From positions 1 through 64,000 of IMG/VR virus record IMGVR_UViG_3300029908_000004: a stretch of DNA of 64,000 nucleotides. One strand, 5' to 3'. A program made the position numbers and the translations under genes. The notes beneath the pieces were generated by a model, which ran no database searches, was not told the origin of the DNA, and saw only the letters and a list, made by a program, of their open reading frames with translations. The stretch's first letter is position 1. Every line of letters begins with the position of its first letter. This document shows positions 41,489 to 58,687 of the stretch, in pieces.

Positions 41489-42154
41489 ATGATAACCCTA
41501 AGTATGGAACAATTTACCAAACTAAATAGTCGCTCACCAGTAGAATGTAAATGTGAACAATGTAACAGTCTTTTCTACAGAGTAAAACATGATTTACAGA
41601 CAGCTATTCGTAGGAAAGAACCAATATCATTTTGTTCGCCGAAGTGTTATGGTTTATACAGAAACACTAAGACTACTGTCAAATGTTTATGGTGTAAGTC
41701 TGAAGTAGTTAGAATACCAACTACTAAGAATGTCTTCTGTTCGAGATCGTGTTCTGCAAAATATAATAACACACATAAAACATTTGGGACTAGAAGATCG
41801 AAACTTGAGAGATTTCTAGAAGAACAAATAAAATTATCGTACCCCAATTTGGAGCTTATATGCAATAGCAAATCAGTCATCGGTTCAGAGTTAGATTTCT
41901 ATTTCCCGAGGCTCAGATTGGCGATAGAACTCAATGGTATTCTGCACTACGAACCAATCTATGGGACAGATAAATTCTCTAAAATTGTTGACAATGATAG
42001 ACAAAAAGTTAGATTATGTGAAGCTATGGGTATTGAGCTAGCAGTTATTAATTCTTCGTCATGTTCACGCATGAGCGCAGTATTTAAAACTAAGTATTTG
42101 GGGATAACACGTGAATTAATAGACTCTGTTATTGATAGAGGAAATTTGGGGTAG
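41489..42154 (+). mobile_element. Antisense PD-(D/E)XK/Vsr-like homing endonuclease gene with zinc fingers (HEG4)
   Basis: ELDFYFPRLRLAIELNGILHY; CSPKC/CSRSC repeats; TTGACA-18nt-TATACT promoter at 41449-41478. Confidence 0.8.
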
Positions 42155-42221
42155 ATAGAGAGGTTCAAACTCTCGCTAAGGGAGCCACAGACCCTCGTGC
42201 TTTCATTACACTATACCTACC
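42147..42221 (-). tRNA. tRNA-His(GTG), replacement copy
   Basis: G-1:C73; AGGGT-CT GTG GC-TCCCT; CCA. Confidence 0.88.
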
Positions 42222-47546: not shown

Positions 47547-48095
47547 TTATCCAATACTTTCGGGGTCATCATCAACATAGTTTACTGTAGCCATAGAAGC
47601 AGGCATACAAAACTCATTCACTGACATTTTGTAACCACGGTTTGAGATTGTGAATGAATCTTTCCAGTTCCATTCGTCCATTACATAATTACGGAAATCT
47701 TCTTCCGTTACTTCAATGATCGTGTCAGAAGACATTTCTAGCATTGTAATCGCTCTGTCGTAGGACCTAAGATAACAACATGGGGCTGATTCAGATATGC
47801 TTAGTGAACTTATTTGTTTTGAAATGTCAATCTTAGCATCAGGCTCTTTGACTTTTGAGACTGCCCAAGTAAGTTTCTTCTTACACAGAGTCCGGAAATC
47901 GGCTACTGCTTCACGATATTCCTTCTCGTGTTTGATCCTGTTTGATTTCAGTTTCGTAACAAGGTCGGAGACCTTCATTTTTACGGATTTCATTTGAATC
48001 TCTTCTCCTAAGGTATATGGTTTGAAAGGACGATATTGTTGGTAGTTAGTAGGCTGTATATCAGTGAATTCAGCGAATAATATTGGATTTGGCAT
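47547..48095 (-). CDS. Hypothetical protein
   Basis: SYDRAITMLEMSSD...FRNYVMDEWNWK. Confidence 0.7.
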   Translation of the reverse strand: MPNPILFAEFTDIQPTNYQQYRPFKPYTLGEEIQMKSVKMKVSDLVTKLKSNRIKHEKEYREAVADFRTLCKKKLTWAVSKVKEPDAKIDISKQISSLSISESAPCCYLRSYDRAITMLEMSSDTIIEVTEEDFRNYVMDEWNWKDSFTISNRGYKMSVNEFCMPASMATVNYVDDDPESIG

Positions 48096-48121: not shown

Positions 48122-48316
48122 CTAGTTATCTTTAGATCCACATTTCAAAACGTTCTGAAATATATTTATTAATAACTGTCTATTAAGTTCTTGTTGTTCA
48201 ATTATACTCTTCAAAGCTGCCCTTGAGTAGGAGTTATGGAAATACAAAGTTACTATCAAAGCTACAAACCATGCAGTTGTAGGTAGTACAAAGACCCAAA
48301 ATTCATGAGCGGTCAT
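48122..48316 (-). CDS. Small membrane protein
   Basis: N-terminal transmembrane helix. Confidence 0.55.
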   Translation of the reverse strand: MTAHEFWVFVLPTTAWFVALIVTLYFHNSYSRAALKSIIEQQELNRQLLINIFQNVLKCGSKDN

Positions 48317-48853
48317 TTATATCTTCTCTCCTTGACCCTTCTCTGCGGATTCTTCTTTAGTACCTACCAAACCAATGTGAGTTAATCTCCCCGGGGTGTC
48401 AGCTTCAGTTAGAACCTTCTTCATAACTCCCAATAGGAGAAGAGCACTTTCACGTTGACCTTCTGTTATATCCTCGTGCGTATCAACTGAACGCTTAACT
48501 AATAGTTCCTTAAGAACTATACGTTCGTCGTCACTGATAGTTAGAGTATCTAATTTCTCTAATAACTTGTCCATTTGAAGATATCGAGGGTGAGGATGAT
48601 GCAAATCAGCTGTTAATTTAGCTTGGACTGTCGCCCATAACGGTGTGACTTGAGTATTTAGAACTGTTAGTTGTTTATCGATATCTTGTTTCCATACCAA
48701 CAACGCGTCCTCAGCTTCTTTTCTGTCTTTTTTAGCTTGTACATATAACGTATACACCAAGCCAAGTGTAGCAGAAAACCCAGCTAGTAAAAAACTGAAC
48801 CACCAATTTCCTGTTGTTGCTAACTCTGTAAATACTATTGTAAAAAGTAACAT
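48317..48853 (-). CDS. Membrane-anchored coiled-coil protein
   Basis: Transmembrane helix followed by a helical region. Confidence 0.6.
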   Translation of the reverse strand: MLLFTIVFTELATTGNWWFSFLLAGFSATLGLVYTLYVQAKKDRKEAEDALLVWKQDIDKQLTVLNTQVTPLWATVQAKLTADLHHPHPRYLQMDKLLEKLDTLTISDDERIVLKELLVKRSVDTHEDITEGQRESALLLLGVMKKVLTEADTPGRLTHIGLVGTKEESAEKGQGEKI

Positions 48854-48929
48854 AACTCAATGTCCCCGTCTATCCATTAAATGCTTGGAACTCTGGGGTT
48901 CACTGGTTGTAATGGGTCTTTCTGTTCCC

Positions 48930-49260
48930 AGGTAGACCCTAACCCGGTTAATCAACTAAGAAGATTAACAATACGCTGGGGCAGAAACACTGGCTAGGCT
49001 GGAAATCATCCAGGCTGGCAGAGTGTCGATACCAACAGCGTTTACGTTAACAGTTTTGCCTGTTATTGTTGTATAGTCGTTTAACGTGAGCCTATAGCAC
49101 GACCTGTCATTATTTGCAATTCATACCAAGCGAACCCGGGAGCGGCCCCTATGGTGGACACTCGGGATTCAACCTCCGTGCCCTTATAATTGGTGGACCG
49201 CGAGGGAGTTGAACCCTCGTTAATGGTCATGCTTACAAATAAATCATACAGGTTTAACCG
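48930..49260 (-). ncRNA. ssrA: Circularly permuted two-piece tmRNA
   Basis: The acceptor piece (49260-49191: T arm GAGGG-TTCAACT-CCCTC, GCGGTCC-A-CCA) precedes the coding piece starting GGGCCGC at 49148 (G3:U70). Helix 2 TTGCAAATAA/TTATTTGTAA; pk1-like element; AATAACA-GGC resume context; tag ORF 49060-48965. Confidence 0.85.
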
Positions 49261-49746
49261 TTAGAACTTAAATACTATTCCACCGCTATAACGAAACCCA
49301 GAGACCCCTTTACCATCATGAATTGAATATATGTGGTCTAGGTCAATGGCTCTAATAGCAACATGTTTAAATAGGTTGTAATCAACTGCTCCGCCAGTGG
49401 CTATAGCAAATCCAGAATCCGAAAACTTATTAATCTCTGCACGTTCCCAGCCTAGTAATACGTGGCTGGATACGTCTATGTTTCCTACTGAGAATAACTT
49501 TACAGTAGGACCAACAGAGTATACATAAGCTCGCTTACCGTCTGAGAAATTGCCACTTAGGTCTACTGTTGCACCAAACCTAGGAGTGAAGAAGTAAGTT
49601 CCATCTGCTTGATACCCAAGCACGTTGGAAAACTGACTTACATCTGTATGGCGATATTGAATACCACCGTAGACCTCGACCTTGTCTTGGGCGAGTGCGA
49701 AAGTACTTAATAGTACCATAGCAACAGCTAACATGAAATTACGCAT
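49261..49746 (-). CDS. Outer-membrane beta-barrel protein (8-stranded, OmpX/Ail-like)
   Basis: Signal peptide, amphipathic strands, C-terminal GIVFKF. Confidence 0.75.
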   Translation of the reverse strand: MRNFMLAVAMVLLSTFALAQDKVEVYGGIQYRHTDVSQFSNVLGYQADGTYFFTPRFGATVDLSGNFSDGKRAYVYSVGPTVKLFSVGNIDVSSHVLLGWERAEINKFSDSGFAIATGGAVDYNLFKHVAIRAIDLDHIYSIHDGKGVSGFRYSGGIVFKF

Positions 49747-49863
49747 TTATATTTCTCTCCTTGGAAATCTTATGGGAATCAGGTGCAGGGCTTTAGGCTA
49801 CAATCCCATCTTGTAGTAGCTCCTAAAGTGTCTAGTGTTACCTAGAGCCTACACCCTCACTAT

Positions 49864-49938
49864 TGGCGATCCAGATCGGATTTGAACCGACACAAACTTC
49901 AGAGACAGTGAAGTGCACTGCCGTTATGCTACTGGACC
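49864..49938 (-). tRNA. tRNA-Asp(GTC)
   Basis: CTTCA-CT GTC TC-TGAAG; G73; CCA. Confidence 0.9.
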
Positions 49939-49950
49939 AAAATCTTAGGT

Positions 49951-51283: not shown

Positions 51284-51362
51284 TGGTGGATCGTATGAGA
51301 ATCGAACTCATCTGAAATCTTCTTTGCAAAAGAAGTGACCACCCCGTGCAGTCCCACAACCC
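51284..51362 (-). tRNA. tRNA-Ala(TGC), replacement copy
   Basis: CTTCT-TT TGC AA-AGAAG; G3:U70; CCA. Confidence 0.88.
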
Positions 51363-51368
51363 ATTTAT

Positions 51369-51899
51369 ATGCCAATTCGTAACTGTTTATATTGTAACAA
51401 ACTATTTGATGCTCCACAACGTGATATTACCAGAGGTAATGGTAAATACTGTTCCAGGAAATGCTCTGGAAACTATAAGAGCTCTCTTCCTAGTAAAGCT
51501 CCTATTATAGAGCTTACTTGTGCTTATTGTAATAGTACATTTACTAAGCCTTCCAGATACGTTAGAAAAGCCAATTCTAGAAGCGGATTGCGCTTTTGTA
51601 ACCGTAAGTGTAAAGAACTTGGACAGCGATTAGACGGTGGTAACATAAAAGCTATACAACCATCTCATTTTGGCACAGGTACCGGAGAACACCATTATAG
51701 AGCAAAAGCTCTAAACGCATTCCCAAATAAGTGTAATAGATGTGGATATGATGAATTAATAGGGATCCTTGTTGTACACCACAAGGATCGTAACCGTTCC
51801 AATTCTCATCTATCAAACTTAGAGATTCTGTGCCCAAATTGTCACGCTAAAGAACATTACATTAATCACGATGGATCGTATAGCTCAAAGAGAAAATGA
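51369..51899 (+). mobile_element. Antisense HNH homing endonuclease gene (HEG6)
   Basis: CNRCG...VHHKDRNRSNSHLSNLEILCPNCHAKEH; CSRKC repeats; promoter motif at 51256-51266. Confidence 0.9.
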
Positions 51900-52790: not shown

Positions 52791-53549
52791 TTATGCTAAT
52801 GGAACAAGGATATAATCCATCAGCTTCTTGCCAATCTTTGAGCTTGATACGTCAATGTCCTGCTCATTGGCGCGGGCTCTTGCCTTCTTGACGAATCTTG
52901 ACAGGTTTTCAACCCTCTCCAGAAGTGAAGCTTTCATAACTGGAGTCAACATTGAGGACCATTCCTGAGTTCTCAATAGACCTGTTGCAATGGTTTCTTC
53001 CAGAATTTGACACTGTGCTGGATGTTTGTCTGTAGCCGGGTACAGAACTAGTGGTTTCTTTACAAGTGTTTTGCGCTCTGATTCCACGTCTCTCGCTTGA
53101 TAGATTCCTACTGAGCGGTTATCGTCTTGCTTGAACCCTTTTGTTGGATCAAGTGTTGGAATAGCTGTCAGAAGAACCTGAACTTCCTTCAACCTCTTTT
53201 CCAACTGCAATAGACTTGTGGCGGGGACATCCTTCAGGATTGTGTTTCCGTCATCGTCTACCACATCTGCTCTTGCTTGAGTATTTGCTACATCAACCTG
53301 ATGTGACAGGTCAATACTCTTGATCTGGAATGCCGACCACCACAACAGTTCATCTTTCACTGTTGTCTGAATCTCTGACACTTCCTCGATCTTGACTGGT
53401 GCACCTTCTGTATAAGCAGAGTAGGTCTTACGAATCTCACTGAAATGAGATCTTTTCTTCTCGAAGGTGGCCTCTAATTCAGTCCGTGTTTTTGCGGCTT
53501 GATTTTCCAAATTCTTCTCAACCGCTAGTAACTCATGTAGCTTTGGCAT
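52791..53549 (-). CDS. Conserved phage coiled-coil protein
   Basis: MPKLHELLAVEK...VPATSLLQLEK...IPTLDP...YPATDKHPAQ...KKARARAN. Confidence 0.8.
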   Translation of the reverse strand: MPKLHELLAVEKNLENQAAKTRTELEATFEKKRSHFSEIRKTYSAYTEGAPVKIEEVSEIQTTVKDELLWWSAFQIKSIDLSHQVDVANTQARADVVDDDGNTILKDVPATSLLQLEKRLKEVQVLLTAIPTLDPTKGFKQDDNRSVGIYQARDVESERKTLVKKPLVLYPATDKHPAQCQILEETIATGLLRTQEWSSMLTPVMKASLLERVENLSRFVKKARARANEQDIDVSSSKIGKKLMDYILVPLA

Positions 53550-54974: not shown

Positions 54975-55373
54975 CTATCCATCTATGTTAGTGTTTTGTT
55001 TCTTCTTCCAGTCACGTATTGCAGCCGCTATCGCGTCTTGGGCAAGAACCGAGCAATGAATCTTGACCGGAGGCAGTGACAGCTCTTTCACTATGTCGGT
55101 GTTCTTGATCTGCAGAGCCTCGTCCACCGTCTTGCCTTTTACCCACTCGGTCGCCAGCGATGACGATGCGATCGCCGAGCCGCAGCCGAACGTCTTGAAC
55201 TTCGCGTCCTCGATGATCCTGGTCTGCGGGTTTACCCGGATTTGCAGCTTCATGACGTCGCCGCATTCCGGAGCGCCGACCAGCCCGGTGCCAACCTCAT
55301 CTGCATTCTTGTCCATGGTGCCGACGTTGCGCGGATTGGTGTAGTGATCCAGTACCTTATCGCTGTAAGCCAT
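54975..55373 (-). CDS. iscU: Fe-S cluster scaffold protein IscU/NifU
   Basis: YSDKVLDHYTNPRNVG...GAPECGDVMKLQI...KFKTFGCGSAIASSS...LPPVKIHCSVLA. Confidence 0.97.
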   Translation of the reverse strand: MAYSDKVLDHYTNPRNVGTMDKNADEVGTGLVGAPECGDVMKLQIRVNPQTRIIEDAKFKTFGCGSAIASSSLATEWVKGKTVDEALQIKNTDIVKELSLPPVKIHCSVLAQDAIAAAIRDWKKKQNTNIDG

Positions 55374-56986: not shown

Positions 56987-58687
56987 TTACTCCGCTTCTG
57001 CTTCTTCAGTTTCCAATACTTCCGTTTTCCCTGAAACGAATTGGGCAATCAACGAAGGCACATTGGTATCGAATCCAACCACGTCCAACGAACGTACATC
57101 GTTTGGATCTGCGATCGAGAATCCAGTTGCTGTCATCCCGATGACAATCTGATGAGCGTTACGTCCAGAACTCTGACGATAGCTCTCCAAAGCGCTAAAT
57201 ACGTGTTTAGGTCCTGCCCAAGTCTCGTTGTCAGTGATGTTGACAAACACATCGACTGGCATCTTCTTTTCTTGTGCATCCTTATATGGAAGTGAACAAT
57301 CTGTTCCTCCCCACCCTGTGCGTAGTGCCTTGGATATTGCTGCGTCTAGCTTCATGGATTTAACCAATCCAACATCAATCATCTTGGTGTTGTAGGAAGC
57401 AACGTGATGCCATGGCTCATTATGCATGATTACCATAGCCATTGCTACTGCACCCATGATTGGTGACATGTTTGGACAACCAACAAGATTTCCCCATCCC
57501 ATTGAGCCGGAACAATCCAAGCCAATGTAATAGTTCAAATTGGTGGTTTCAGCATTCTTAAACGTCTTATAGAACGCTGCGTCCATAGCATCCAAAACTG
57601 GTTTCACCACTGTCCAAGTCAACGAGCCACGAATGCCATGACCAGTTTGATAGGTTAACATAGCATTCAGAACAGTTAGTGGGTGAACACGACTACGTTG
57701 CAGATATTCCTGATCCGACAGACGTGTTACTACTAGCTTTGACGCCTCTGATAGAGGAGCTAACAGCTTGATGCTACTCATCTTACCAAGGTTCCTGATC
57801 ATTGCGTTCATGGGCATTTTCTGAAGCAATGCCTCCCAAACTGCAACGTGGTTCAATGCCTCTGTAGGGATCATTTCGCGAGTGAGGTTGTACTTCTGAA
57901 TCGCTGAAATGATTACCTTTGGGTCTTTTTCATTCTTCATTGCCTCGAACTGCTTAATCAGTTCTGGCAAGTCCTTCTCTAAATCGGTTGCTCCGTGCAG
58001 ACCTTTGGTAGCCCAATCAAACAAGGCTTTCTGCCCATTCGACAACGTAGCATGGGTACCTGCATGGGTGGCACGAAGGATGTCGCGATGGCTCCATCCT
58101 TGTGTTCCATCCACACGCCGTGATTGGTATTTCACCATCTGATAAGCCAGTTTCTGCTCATCTTTCTGTGTGTACCAATCTGCTACGCCGTTGCGTAGTG
58201 ACCTATTCCAACGCATCTTTGCGGCACCTTCGGCCTGTTTTGACCGCATGCCTTTCAGATATTCCATTAGTTGGAACAAATGCGTTCCGATACGTGCTAC
58301 GTCTGGCAGTTTATCCAAGGCGTAACCACGAGTGGATTTGTCACCGAATGCTATACACTGTGCCAACGCGAACAGGGCATAGTCATTCTTTGGAGCCCGG
58401 CCAGATACAGAGATATCGACAATCGTTTTTACTGTCTTCTCTCCATCTGCCGAAATACAGCGTTCAACGCACTTTGCGTTGTCACGCGTCAACTTGTCGG
58501 CACCAACATAATAAGTGCCACCTTCGCTTCCAAGAATTATAAATCTCTGGAGTCGGTCCCAGTCACTCAGTTCAAAAACATAACCTCCAGCGTTATTCTG
58601 AACTTGATTCTTTTCTGGGAATGGTTCACTTTGAGGAATTGTTGGCTTCATCGCCCCATACACATTTGTTAGGTTGGGTTTCTTCAT
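56987..58687 (-). CDS. rsr: Ro60/Rsr TROVE-domain RNA-binding protein with a vWA domain
   Basis: QVQNNAGGYVF...DRLQRFIILGSEGGTYY...KYQSR..GWSHRDILRATH...MIRNLGKMS...SRVHPL...LDCSGSM...GGTDCSLP...TDNETW...VVGFDTNVP. Confidence 0.96.
   Translation of the reverse strand: MKKPNLTNVYGAMKPTIPQSEPFPEKNQVQNNAGGYVFELSDWDRLQRFIILGSEGGTYYVGADKLTRDNAKCVERCISADGEKTVKTIVDISVSGRAPKNDYALFALAQCIAFGDKSTRGYALDKLPDVARIGTHLFQLMEYLKGMRSKQAEGAAKMRWNRSLRNGVADWYTQKDEQKLAYQMVKYQSRRVDGTQGWSHRDILRATHAGTHATLSNGQKALFDWATKGLHGATDLEKDLPELIKQFEAMKNEKDPKVIISAIQKYNLTREMIPTEALNHVAVWEALLQKMPMNAMIRNLGKMSSIKLLAPLSEASKLVVTRLSDQEYLQRSRVHPLTVLNAMLTYQTGHGIRGSLTWTVVKPVLDAMDAAFYKTFKNAETTNLNYYIGLDCSGSMGWGNLVGCPNMSPIMGAVAMAMVIMHNEPWHHVASYNTKMIDVGLVKSMKLDAAISKALRTGWGGTDCSLPYKDAQEKKMPVDVFVNITDNETWAGPKHVFSALESYRQSSGRNAHQIVIGMTATGFSIADPNDVRSLDVVGFDTNVPSLIAQFVSGKTEVLETEEAEAE

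What the first reader, a model, noticed from the sequence alone, without database searches (positions are those of the whole stretch)
48930..49260. Phage-encoded permuted two-piece tmRNA with a non-canonical long tag
Seen: the acceptor piece (T arm plus GCGGTCC-ACCA) lies upstream of the GGGCCGC 5' piece with G3:U70. Helix 2 (TTGCAAATAA/TTATTTGTAA, TGGT/ACCA) and the terminal pair CGGTTAA/TTAACCG close the permuted structure. The tag after AATAACA-GGC reads (A)GKTVNVNAVGIDTLPAWMISSLASVSAPAYC*, 31 codons without the terminal Ala-Ala. Known: permuted tmRNAs occur in a few bacterial lineages, and ClpXP recognises C-terminal Ala-Ala. Inference: it rescues stalled ribosomes while redirecting or avoiding degradation of the tagged products.
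Basis: partly seen in the sequence, partly recalled or inferred. Interest (0 to 1): 0.8.

Follow-up and report, generated by a model that had tools for sequence, protein, structure and literature searches.

The report
Divergent two-piece tmRNA in peat phage
A large uncultured peat phage carries, among its 29 tRNA genes, a transcribed but unusually divergent copy of the split ("two-piece") ribosome-rescue RNA tmRNA. Its predicted tag is long and lacks the usual Ala-Ala degradation signal. This is a new member of a known class, not a new kind of system.

Summary
On the minus strand (49260 to 48911) lies a circularly permuted tmRNA gene. The T arm and the GCGGUCC-ACCA strand come first, then a 42-nt intervening sequence. 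Next come GGGCCGC (G3:U70), a D-loop analogue, helix 2, a PK1-like hairpin and a resume codon GGC with U-5/A-4. A 31-codon frame then ends in UAA.

Both standard detectors just miss it. Rfam RF04321 gives 42.5 bits against a cutoff of 47 (E 7.5e-7). Peat metatranscriptome contigs cover it at 4-10 times the depth of its neighbours, so it is expressed. Processing into two pieces is not shown.

Phage two-piece tmRNAs are already known, and I found at least 100 in IMG/VR. This one differs in four ways:
- its tag ends in Tyr-Cys, whereas all 66 other distinct tags end in Ala;
- a near-invariant A in the tRNA-like domain is C;
- its intervening sequence is a degenerate duplicate of the acceptor end that folds into a G3:U minihelix with ACCA;
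- all five copies found are identical, so the tag frame cannot be tested by comparison.

The claim that it redirects or avoids degradation remains untested.

The parts
49191..49260 (-). Predicted acceptor piece (70 nt; 5' boundary uncertain). It holds the 5' strand of the closing helix (49260-49254), the 3' strands of helix 2 (49253-49248, 49242-49233, 49231-49224), the T arm (49218-49202, loop UUCAACU), and the acceptor 3' strand GCGGUCC plus the encoded ACCA (49201-49191).
   Evidence: Direct reading; Rfam RF04321 alignment; ARAGORN -ps95 3' tRNA domain; cofold probabilities.
49149..49190 (-). Intervening sequence (42 nt). Bases 49183-49152 form a minihelix, GGGCAC / GUGUCC with G3:U, an imperfect T-arm-like loop and its own ACCA. 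It is a degenerate duplicate of the T arm and acceptor 3' end.
   Evidence: Local alignment to 49223-49191 scores 25; 1 of 2000 shuffles reaches that. The fold is -11.8 kcal/mol. No other permuted tmRNA with a second UCCACCA was found among the hits that 3 collection scans returned (80 of the 108 genome hits were fetched and checked).
48911..49148 (-). Predicted coding piece (about 238 nt; 3' boundary uncertain). It holds the acceptor 5' strand GGGCCGC (49148-49142), the D-loop analogue UCCCGGGUUCGC (49141-49130), the 5' strands of helix 2 (49128-49102), the PK1 region (49101-49072), the tag frame, the closing-helix 3' strand (48951-48945) and the 3' hairpin (48939-48914).
   Evidence: The 3' hairpin loop ACCUGGGAACAGAAA matches the alpha_tmRNA consensus and loci L093 and L009.
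48965..49060 (-). Predicted tag reading frame. Resume codon GGC (49060-49058) preceded by U-5 A-4; 31 sense codons; UAA at 48967-48965; a second in-frame stop (UAG) two codons later. Codons 8-29 lie in a long imperfect hairpin (49040-48973).
   Evidence: ARAGORN -ps95; comparison with L009; frame rule from PMC2481249; hairpin in the MFE and centroid folds.
49292..49323 (-). 5' arm of a possible long-range stem around the whole precursor. It lies inside the 3' end of the upstream ORF.
   Evidence: Present in the MFE and centroid of the 456-nt fold. 26 interrupted pairs, duplex -26.4 kcal/mol, reached by 2-4% of shuffled flanks and 1 of 120 genomic controls. Suggestive only.
48872..48902 (-). 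3' arm of the same possible precursor stem.
49261..49746 (-). Upstream ORF (161 aa, signal peptide, predicted 8-stranded outer-membrane beta-barrel). It is probably co-transcribed with the tmRNA.
   Evidence: One metatranscriptome contig spans 48976-49752 at depth 88. No promoter-like site lies between the ORF and the tmRNA. Structure look-alikes belong to the OMP_b-brl family.

Best explanation
This is a genuine, transcribed, strongly diverged, circularly permuted (two-piece) tmRNA gene of a large uncultured peat phage. It sits inside the phage's tRNA array.

Proposed mechanism:
- The gene is transcribed together with the upstream outer-membrane-protein gene (supported by RNA contigs, not proven).
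- Host tRNA-processing enzymes cut at the tRNA-like domain. This releases a roughly 70-nt acceptor piece ending in ACCA and a roughly 238-nt coding piece starting at GGGCCGC (inferred from the family).
- The two pieces stay together through the acceptor stem and helix 2 (shown by sequence and folding).
- Host AlaRS charges the RNA through G3:U70 and A73. With SmpB, which was not found in this window, it enters stalled ribosomes (inferred).
- Translation resumes at GGC, adds Ala plus 31 residues ending in Tyr-Cys, and stops at UAA, which frees the ribosome (inferred).

The likely benefit to the phage is ribosome recycling during infection. Because the tag has no C-terminal Ala-Ala, ClpXP-type degradation of tagged products is probably weak or absent. 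Whether that loss is adaptive or mere drift is unknown.
For: - Every family-defining structural element is present and in permuted order.
- Rfam tmRNA_permuted gives E 7.5e-7, with an alpha_tmRNA-like 3' hairpin.
- ARAGORN at 95% threshold calls a permuted tmRNA with this tag.
- In the cofold of the two pieces, the acceptor stem and T arm have P about 1.0 and helix 2 has P 0.6-0.84.
- Fold z-scores are -4.0 and -3.6.
- The gene is on the same strand as the 29 tRNA genes and lies among them.
- It is identical in five contigs assembled from peat samples, of 143, 215, 152 and 4 kb plus the window.
- RNA-library contigs cover it at depth 88-96, against 0-23 for the flanks.
- The resume context matches L009 and the U85/A86 rule.
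- Phage two-piece tmRNAs are an established class.
Against: - It is below the curated thresholds of both detectors. Other viral permuted tmRNAs score 70-136 bits.
- The nucleotide after UUCG in the D-loop analogue is C. It is A in 83 of 84 unique viral permuted tmRNAs. The junction before the T stem is UAAC instead of GGAC.
- The tag ends in Cys, whereas all 66 other distinct tags end in Ala.
- The tag frame has no comparative support, because all copies are identical.
- PK1 has low probability in the nested thermodynamic model.
- Two-piece processing is not shown.
- No SmpB was found among the roughly 37 window ORFs scanned.
Confidence: 0.6

Rival explanations
1. The RNA is derived from tmRNA but no longer tags proteins. 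Its tRNA-like domain is kept and highly expressed, while its message part has drifted. It would then act as a tRNA-like-domain-only rescuer, or as a decoy that competes with host tmRNA for SmpB, AlaRS or EF-Tu and so damps host trans-translation. Alternatively it is simply decaying.
For: - Scores below threshold, a unique change at a near-invariant junction nucleotide, and a non-canonical tag whose frame runs through a structural hairpin.
- A CDS-less tmRNA-like RNA of mycobacteriophage DS6A is reported to inhibit host tmRNA (PMC11915505).
- Phage plaque assays in E. coli need ribosome release, not the tag (PMC2481249).
Against: - The acceptor stem, G3:U70, ACCA, T arm, helix 2, the U-5/A-4 resume context and an in-frame stop are all intact.
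- The RNA is abundant.
- The resume context is shared with L009, which has a conventional tag end.
Confidence: 0.25
2. It is a captured piece of a host ssrA gene with no present function, such as an attachment site or an integration/excision scar. The duplicated acceptor 3' end would be the scar.
For: - tmRNA genes are frequent integration sites, and partial 3'-end duplicates are common in bacterial genomes (108 loci; PMC11915505).
- The intervening sequence is a degenerate duplicate of the acceptor end.
Against: - Both pieces of the gene are complete, not only a 3' fragment.
- No integrase or recombinase was detected in the neighbouring ORFs.
- The duplicate has acquired its own complementary 5' strand.
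- The region is highly represented in RNA libraries.
- No cellular genome among 185,579 species representatives carries this tRNA-like-domain variant.
Confidence: 0.05
3. It is a chance resemblance within the 3' untranslated region of the upstream gene.
For: Neither detector passes its default threshold.
Against: - The pattern occurs in 0 of 100 shuffles.
- Rfam gives E 7.5e-7.
- Several independent modules appear in the correct order, including the alpha-type 3' hairpin motif.
Confidence: 0.03

Closest known systems
Alphaproteobacterial two-piece tmRNA (Caulobacter crescentus ssrA; Keiler, Shapiro & Williams 2000, as cited in PMC9004378; Rfam RF01849 / RF04321)
   Same: - Permuted gene order: acceptor piece, intervening sequence, coding piece.
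- A 7-bp acceptor stem with G3:U70 and an encoded CCA.
- Helix 2 holding the pieces together.
- A 3' hairpin whose loop carries ACCUGG-AACAGAA.
   Different: - Only 27 bits on RF01849 (cutoff 50) and 42.5 on RF04321 (cutoff 47).
- The A after UUCG is replaced by C.
- The tag is 31 codons ending in Tyr-Cys, instead of about 10-14 codons ending in Ala-Ala.
- There is almost no pseudoknot region after the tag.
- The intervening sequence is a tRNA-like minihelix.
Phage-encoded two-piece tmRNAs (OM43 phage Melnitz and pelagimyophages; 53 two-piece among 133 unique phage tmRNAs; PMC9004378)
   Same: A phage-borne permuted ssrA of alpha-like type, placed among phage tRNA genes and downstream of a promoter shared with another gene. 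The presumed role is ribosome rescue during infection.
   Different: - 50 of the 53 phages with two-piece tmRNAs in that survey came from marine or aquatic samples; this phage is from peat.
- No riboswitch was found here.
- There is no DNA similarity to any of 50,697 deposited phage records.
- The tag is non-canonical.
tmRNA of IMG/VR contig UViG_3300010396_000007 (locus L009), the nearest sequence relative found
   Same: - The same resume context (AACAAUA-R-MM-GGC-AAA).
- A tag starting Gly-Lys with a hairpin inside a long (26-codon) frame.
- An ACCUAGCAACAGAAG-type 3' hairpin.
- The contig shares three proteins with the window at 27-38% identity.
   Different: - L009 passes ARAGORN and Rfam (72.8 bits).
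- Its tag ends Val-Met-Ala.
- Its intervening sequence is short and has no minihelix.
- Its junction nucleotides are canonical.
CDS-less tmRNA-like RNA of mycobacteriophage DS6A (mentioned in PMC11915505)
   Same: A phage RNA that keeps the tRNA-like domain while the tagging function is absent or doubtful. It is a precedent for an inhibitory or decoy role.
   Different: DS6A is a standard-order gene with no reading frame at all. Here a resume context, an open frame and a stop codon are present.
Alanine acceptor minihelices (classical AlaRS minihelix substrates, from my own knowledge; and the conserved hairpin after tRNA-Ala in Saccharibacteria seen)
   Same: A short hairpin whose stem carries G3:U and ends in ACCA, placed directly after an alanine-accepting RNA gene.
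   Different: Here it lies between the two halves of a tmRNA gene and is clearly a degenerate duplicate. No function is known for either natural case.

Membership tests
Circularly permuted (two-piece) tmRNA | Acceptor stem built from two separate strands, with G3:U70, discriminator A73 and CCA | tested here: met
   GGGCCGC (49148-49142) pairs 7/7 with GCGGUCC (49201-49195), followed by ACCA. Pair probability is about 1.0.
Circularly permuted (two-piece) tmRNA | T arm with a 5-bp stem and a 7-nt UUCRANN loop next to the acceptor 3' strand | tested here: met
   GAGGG-UUCAACU-CCCUC. Probability is about 1.0.
Circularly permuted (two-piece) tmRNA | Gene order: acceptor piece upstream of coding piece, separated by an intervening sequence | tested here: met
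   Pattern match at 49215-49131; 0 of 100 shuffles match. ARAGORN labels it 'Permuted'.
Circularly permuted (two-piece) tmRNA | Helix 2 joining the two pieces next to the tRNA-like domain | tested here: met
   Segments of 6, 10 and 7 bp, recovered by the Rfam alignment, the MFE fold and the cofold.
Circularly permuted (two-piece) tmRNA | Conserved junction nucleotides of the tRNA-like domain (GGNUUCG-A on the 5' side, GGAC before the T stem) | tested here: not met
   GG and UUCG are present, but the next base is C (A in 83 of 84 unique viral examples). UAAC replaces GGAC and is unique among the 84.
Circularly permuted (two-piece) tmRNA | Pseudoknot PK1 shortly upstream of the resume codon | tested here: inconclusive
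   Hairpin CGUG/CACG is aligned by Rfam. A second stem UAUAG/CUAUA was seen by eye, 12 nt before the resume codon. The first stem has low probability (about 0.1) in the nested thermodynamic model, because another helix competes with it.
Circularly permuted (two-piece) tmRNA | Resume codon with the upstream frame-setting U-5 / A-4, followed by an open frame and a stop | tested here: met
   U49065 and A49064 precede GGC at 49060; UAA follows 31 codons later. The rule is from PMC2481249.
Circularly permuted (two-piece) tmRNA | Tag ending in a hydrophobic residue plus Ala-Ala (or at least Ala) | tested here: not met
   The tag ends Ala-Tyr-Cys. All 66 distinct tags of 103 other viral permuted tmRNAs end in Ala.
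Circularly permuted (two-piece) tmRNA | Passes curated detector thresholds (Rfam gathering score; ARAGORN default) | tested here: not met
   42.5 bits against 47. ARAGORN is negative at default settings and positive at 95%.
Circularly permuted (two-piece) tmRNA | The precursor is cut into two RNAs | tested here: inconclusive
   Only assembled contigs of RNA runs were available. One low-depth contig (48944-49139) covers the coding piece alone, but others span the intervening sequence.
Circularly permuted (two-piece) tmRNA | Alanylation, SmpB binding and trans-translation | not testable with these tools
   No SmpB gene was found among the ORFs scanned, but only 64 kb of a genome of at least 215 kb was seen.
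Alphaproteobacterial subtype (Rfam RF01849) | Clade-specific 3' hairpin and overall score above 50 bits | tested here: inconclusive
   The hairpin motif matches well, but the total is 27 bits. The best nhmmer neighbour, L093, is RF01849-positive.
Phage attachment site derived from ssrA | Only the 3' fragment of the gene, with an integrase adjacent | tested here: not met
   The gene is complete with both halves. No integrase domain was found in the neighbouring ORFs.

The most novel reading that the evidence does not exclude
The gene may yield three RNAs rather than two. The same tRNA-type cuts that free the acceptor and coding pieces would release the intervening 32-nt hairpin as an alanine-type acceptor minihelix (G3:U, ACCA). 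That hairpin could serve as a processing guide or as a chargeable RNA in its own right. Alongside it, the tag would have been remodelled so that rescued proteins escape ClpXP-type degradation. The conserved, covarying G3:U-ACCA hairpins found right after tRNA-Ala in Saccharibacteria would then be an independent example of the same device.
Probability: 0.1. Interest if true: 0.7.

Novelty: new member of a known kind. Interest (0 to 1): 0.38.

Why it matters
Phage-encoded tmRNAs show that large phages invest in keeping ribosomes running. This example extends two-piece phage tmRNAs from mostly marine or aquatic phages to a peat phage.

It also shows that divergent copies slip under the default thresholds of both standard detectors, so surveys may undercount them.

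If its unusual tag is really translated, it would be a natural test of whether phages need only ribosome release or also control the fate of tagged proteins.

The minihelix in the intervening sequence, and its look-alikes after tRNA-Ala in Saccharibacteria, are a small open question about natural alanine minihelices.

Tried and rejected
- **Close relatives for covariation and coding tests.** An exact 26-mer scan and a relaxed tRNA-like-domain pattern were run in IMG/VR and in JGI metagenomes. The flanking-ORF search returned only the same phage. All copies are 100% identical, so no test was possible.
- **Relatives found through the nearby AAA protein** (43% identity, loci L124-L128). They have large tRNA arrays but no tmRNA within 10 kb. 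A UCCACCA-ending element in L126/L128 gave no significant Rfam match.
- **Deposited phage genomes.** No DNA match in near or distant mode.
- **A second 5' half upstream.** A sequence at 49308-49292 gave a 27-bit hit to the standard tmRNA model. Its similarity to the real 5' half is not significant, since 405 of 2000 shuffles reach it. Rejected.
- **Other tag frames.** GCA gives AKLLT then stop, and CAA gives QNC then stop. Both put the U-A dinucleotide at the wrong distance. Rejected as the main frame.
- **Host inference.**
  - No cellular genome carries this tRNA-like-domain variant.
  - Look-alikes of the outer-membrane protein point to Acidobacteriota.
  - IscU look-alikes point to Bacteroidota.
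  - The Acidobacteria loci in hand have standard one-piece tmRNAs.
  - The host is unresolved.
- **Promoter and terminator scan.** Nothing lies between the upstream ORF and the tmRNA.
- **Adapter-flanked RNA contig** (48936-49312). I considered it as evidence of a discrete molecule. Its ends fall inside the upstream ORF and inside the 3' hairpin, and a neighbouring contig also carries an adapter, so it is probably a single library fragment.

Full report
**What the window is.** The 64-kb window has about 40% G+C and nearly all genes on the minus strand. ARAGORN finds 28 tRNA genes between 24 and 60 kb. Rfam adds one more at 42150-42220, which reads as tRNA-His.

Recognisable proteins include a class II ribonucleotide reductase, RecD2 helicase, a PolA fragment, clamp and clamp-loader proteins, endonuclease VII, RNase H, a GH108 lysozyme with a peptidoglycan-binding domain, IscU, and a Ro60/TROVE protein.

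The same DNA occurs in IMG/VR viral contigs of 143 and 215 kb and in JGI contigs. Sixteen DNA and six RNA runs from peat or permafrost hold it. Deposited phage genomes show no DNA similarity, and the best protein identities are below 30%. It is therefore a large, novel, uncultured phage from peat.

**Checking the observation.** I number the RNA from window position 49260 as 1.
- The T arm is at 43-59, the acceptor 3' strand GCGGUCC at 60-66, and ACCA at 67-70.
- After 42 nt comes GGGCCGC (113-119), which pairs 7/7 with the 3' strand and places G3 opposite U70.
- Next is UCCCGGGUUCGC, the D-loop analogue.
- Three helix-2 segments follow, pairing 133-139, 142-151 and 154-159 with 30-37, 19-28 and 8-13.
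- A hairpin CGUG/CACG follows, with a possible second pseudoknot stem UAUAG/CUAUA.
- Then come the single-stranded CAACAAUAACA and GGC at 201.

A generic pattern for a permuted tRNA-like domain matches the window once and matches none of 100 shuffles. Rfam's tmRNA_permuted model aligns 49253-49010 at 42.5 bits, E 7.5e-7. The alpha_tmRNA model aligns the 3' part. There, the hairpin GGGUC-(U)ACCUGGGAACAGAAA-GACCC (48939-48914) mirrors the alphaproteobacterial consensus.

Folding the precursor gives z = -4.0 and recovers helix 2, the T arm and the 3' hairpin. Co-folding the two predicted pieces gives these pair probabilities:

| Element | Pair probability |
|---|---|
| Acceptor stem and T arm | about 1.0 |
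| Helix 2 | 0.6-0.84 |
| Alternative helix 176-187/303-314 | 0.33-0.48 |

The core observation is confirmed.

**Why the detectors miss it.**
- ARAGORN at default settings and Rfam at gathering scores report nothing.
- Other viral permuted tmRNAs score 70-136 bits on the same Rfam model.
- I found four causes of the shortfall:
  - The base after UUCG is C, whereas it is A in 83 of 84 unique viral examples, and the junction before the T stem is UAAC rather than GGAC.
  - The intervening sequence is long.
  - The tag does not resemble the consensus.
  - There is almost no pseudoknot region after the tag.

**The tag.** Three lines favour GGC as the resume codon.
- ARAGORN chooses it.
- It places U at -5 and A at -4, as in E. 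coli U85/A86, the main frame-setting nucleotides (PMC2481249).
- The nearest relative, L009, has AAUAGAC-GGC-AAA at the same place.

The other two frames stop after 5 and 3 codons. The frame gives 31 codons ending Ala-Tyr-Cys, then UAA, with a UAG two codons later.

Among 103 ARAGORN-positive permuted tmRNAs from viral contigs, tags reach 33 residues. All 66 distinct tags end in Ala. Long tags are therefore not unusual in phage tmRNAs, but this C-terminus is.

Codons 8-29 lie in a long hairpin. L009 also has a hairpin inside its frame. The long frames may therefore come from reading into structural RNA.

I could not test whether the frame is under coding constraint. Every copy found is identical, and no variants appear in the RNA contigs. 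By my own estimate, an open frame of 31 codons arises by chance about one time in four or five.

**Expression.** Four metatranscriptome runs were laid on 48300-49950.
- In X14, a contig spanning 48936-49312 has depth 96. The upstream ORF has depth 23, and nothing else is covered.
- In X8, one contig spans 48976-49752 at depth 88. The downstream ORF is at 7-10, and the region beyond 49816 is at 23.
- In X17, a low-depth contig covers 48944-49139, which is the coding piece only.

Uniform DNA carry-over would not give this pattern, so the RNA is abundant. It is probably made from a promoter upstream of the 161-aa ORF, since no promoter-like site lies between them.

These are assembled contigs, so they cannot show processing. 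The adapter-flanked ends in X14 fall at non-meaningful positions.

**Unusual features not in the finding.**
- **Minihelix in the intervening sequence.** It contains a second UCCACCA.
  - Its similarity to the T arm and acceptor end is significant: 1 of 2000 shuffles reaches it.
  - It has gained a complementary 5' strand. As a result it folds as GGGCAC/GUGUCC with G3:U, followed by ACCA (-11.8 kcal/mol).
  - Other permuted genes have plain hairpins here.
  - No other permuted tmRNA with this arrangement turned up among the hits returned for one pattern scanned in the viral and genome collections (80 of the 108 genome hits were fetched and checked).
- **Possible precursor stem.** A 26-pair interrupted stem can form between 49323-49292 and 48902-48872 and would enclose the whole gene. 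It appears in both the MFE and centroid folds. It is moderately unusual: 2-4% of shuffles and 1 of 120 genomic controls reach its energy. It may be a processing stem of the precursor.

**Comparison with known systems.**
- Two-piece tmRNAs are established in Alphaproteobacteria, some Betaproteobacteria and Cyanobacteria.
- Phage-encoded two-piece tmRNAs are published. Phage Melnitz and pelagimyophages carry them, and 53 of 133 unique phage tmRNAs are two-piece, mostly marine (PMC9004378).
- Huge phages carry tmRNA and SmpB (PMC7162821).
- The 2025 tmRNA database lists 79 phage and 11,946 permuted sequences.
Of the 121 loci then in hand (these plus two from an earlier exact-match scan), ARAGORN called a tmRNA in 103 at default settings.

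The class is therefore known, and this is a divergent member with alpha-like features. L033 keeps a homologue of window ORF 47547-48095 just downstream of its own tmRNA. L009 shares three proteins with the window. Both hint at distant kinship of these loci.

**Mechanism and rivals.**
- **Most likely (about 0.6): a working two-piece tmRNA.**
  - It would be processed at its tRNA-like ends, charged with alanine through G3:U70, and used with host or phage SmpB to free stalled ribosomes.
  - The non-canonical tag would make proteolysis of the products doubtful.
- **Main rival (about 0.25): the message part no longer functions.**
  - The RNA would act only through its tRNA-like domain, or as a competitor of host tmRNA.
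  - The DS6A case reported in PMC11915505 is a precedent.
  - The atypical junction nucleotide and the sub-threshold scores argue for this view. The intact acceptor stem, resume context, stop codon and high RNA level argue against simple decay.
- **Unlikely: an integration scar or a chance resemblance.**

**Host.** The host is unresolved.

**Verdict.** The structural observation is right and the identification as a phage permuted tmRNA is right. The tag prediction is the best available but unproven. The functional inference about degradation is speculation. I rate this a new, divergent member of a known kind, of moderate interest.

Noticed in passing
L134:5874-5912 (Saccharibacteria OX335598.1); also L138, L153, L155, L184, L186, L192, L196, L204, L223, L239: About 25 genomes, mostly Saccharibacteria and other CPR bacteria, carry a conserved hairpin of about 33 nt. 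It lies 2-7 nt after tRNA-Ala(UGC) and, where a downstream tRNA was checked, before tRNA-Ile. The stem has G3:U and is followed by ACCA (for example GGGGUG...CACUCC-ACCA). Both stems covary between lineages. It looks like a natural alanine acceptor minihelix of unknown function.
   Followed up: partly
window 42150-42220 (-): Rfam finds a 29th tRNA that ARAGORN misses. By eye its anticodon loop reads CUGUGGC, so it is probably tRNA-His(GUG). No tRNA-Met was seen in the window.
   Followed up: partly
window 56987-58687 (-): A phage-encoded Ro60 (TROVE plus vWA) protein sits inside the tRNA array. Bacterial Ro60 proteins work with Y-RNA-like RNAs that have a tRNA-like module. No Y-RNA match reached threshold in the window, and I did not look for a divergent one.
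   Followed up: no
window 49261-49746 (-): The ORF just upstream of the tmRNA, and apparently co-transcribed with it, is a signal-peptide-bearing 8-stranded outer-membrane beta-barrel look-alike. Its nearest model clusters are mostly from Acidobacteriota. This is a weak host lead and an odd partner for a tmRNA.
   Followed up: partly
window 54975-55373 (-) and 52791-53549 (-): The phage encodes an IscU/NifU-type iron-sulfur scaffold protein (185 bits) and a DUF7873 protein (216 bits) within the tRNA region.
   Followed up: no
L124:7252-7330, L126:7717-7792, L128:7476-7551: Distant relatives of this phage (AAA protein 43% identical; contigs of 88-277 kb) carry a tRNA with anticodon CUA, an amber suppressor. 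This hints at stop-codon reassignment in that group. No such tRNA was found in the window.
   Followed up: no
window 51369-51899 (+): An HNH homing-endonuclease-like ORF lies on the plus strand amid otherwise minus-strand genes, next to tRNA-Ala (51284-51362).
   Followed up: no
L063 and L119 (IMG/VR UViG_3300017925_000001, 110 kb): This is another viral permuted tmRNA that ARAGORN calls only at a relaxed threshold. Its predicted tag (ATEKPMVMAAACGR) also does not end in Ala. Non-canonical tags may therefore recur among sub-threshold phage tmRNAs.
   Followed up: no
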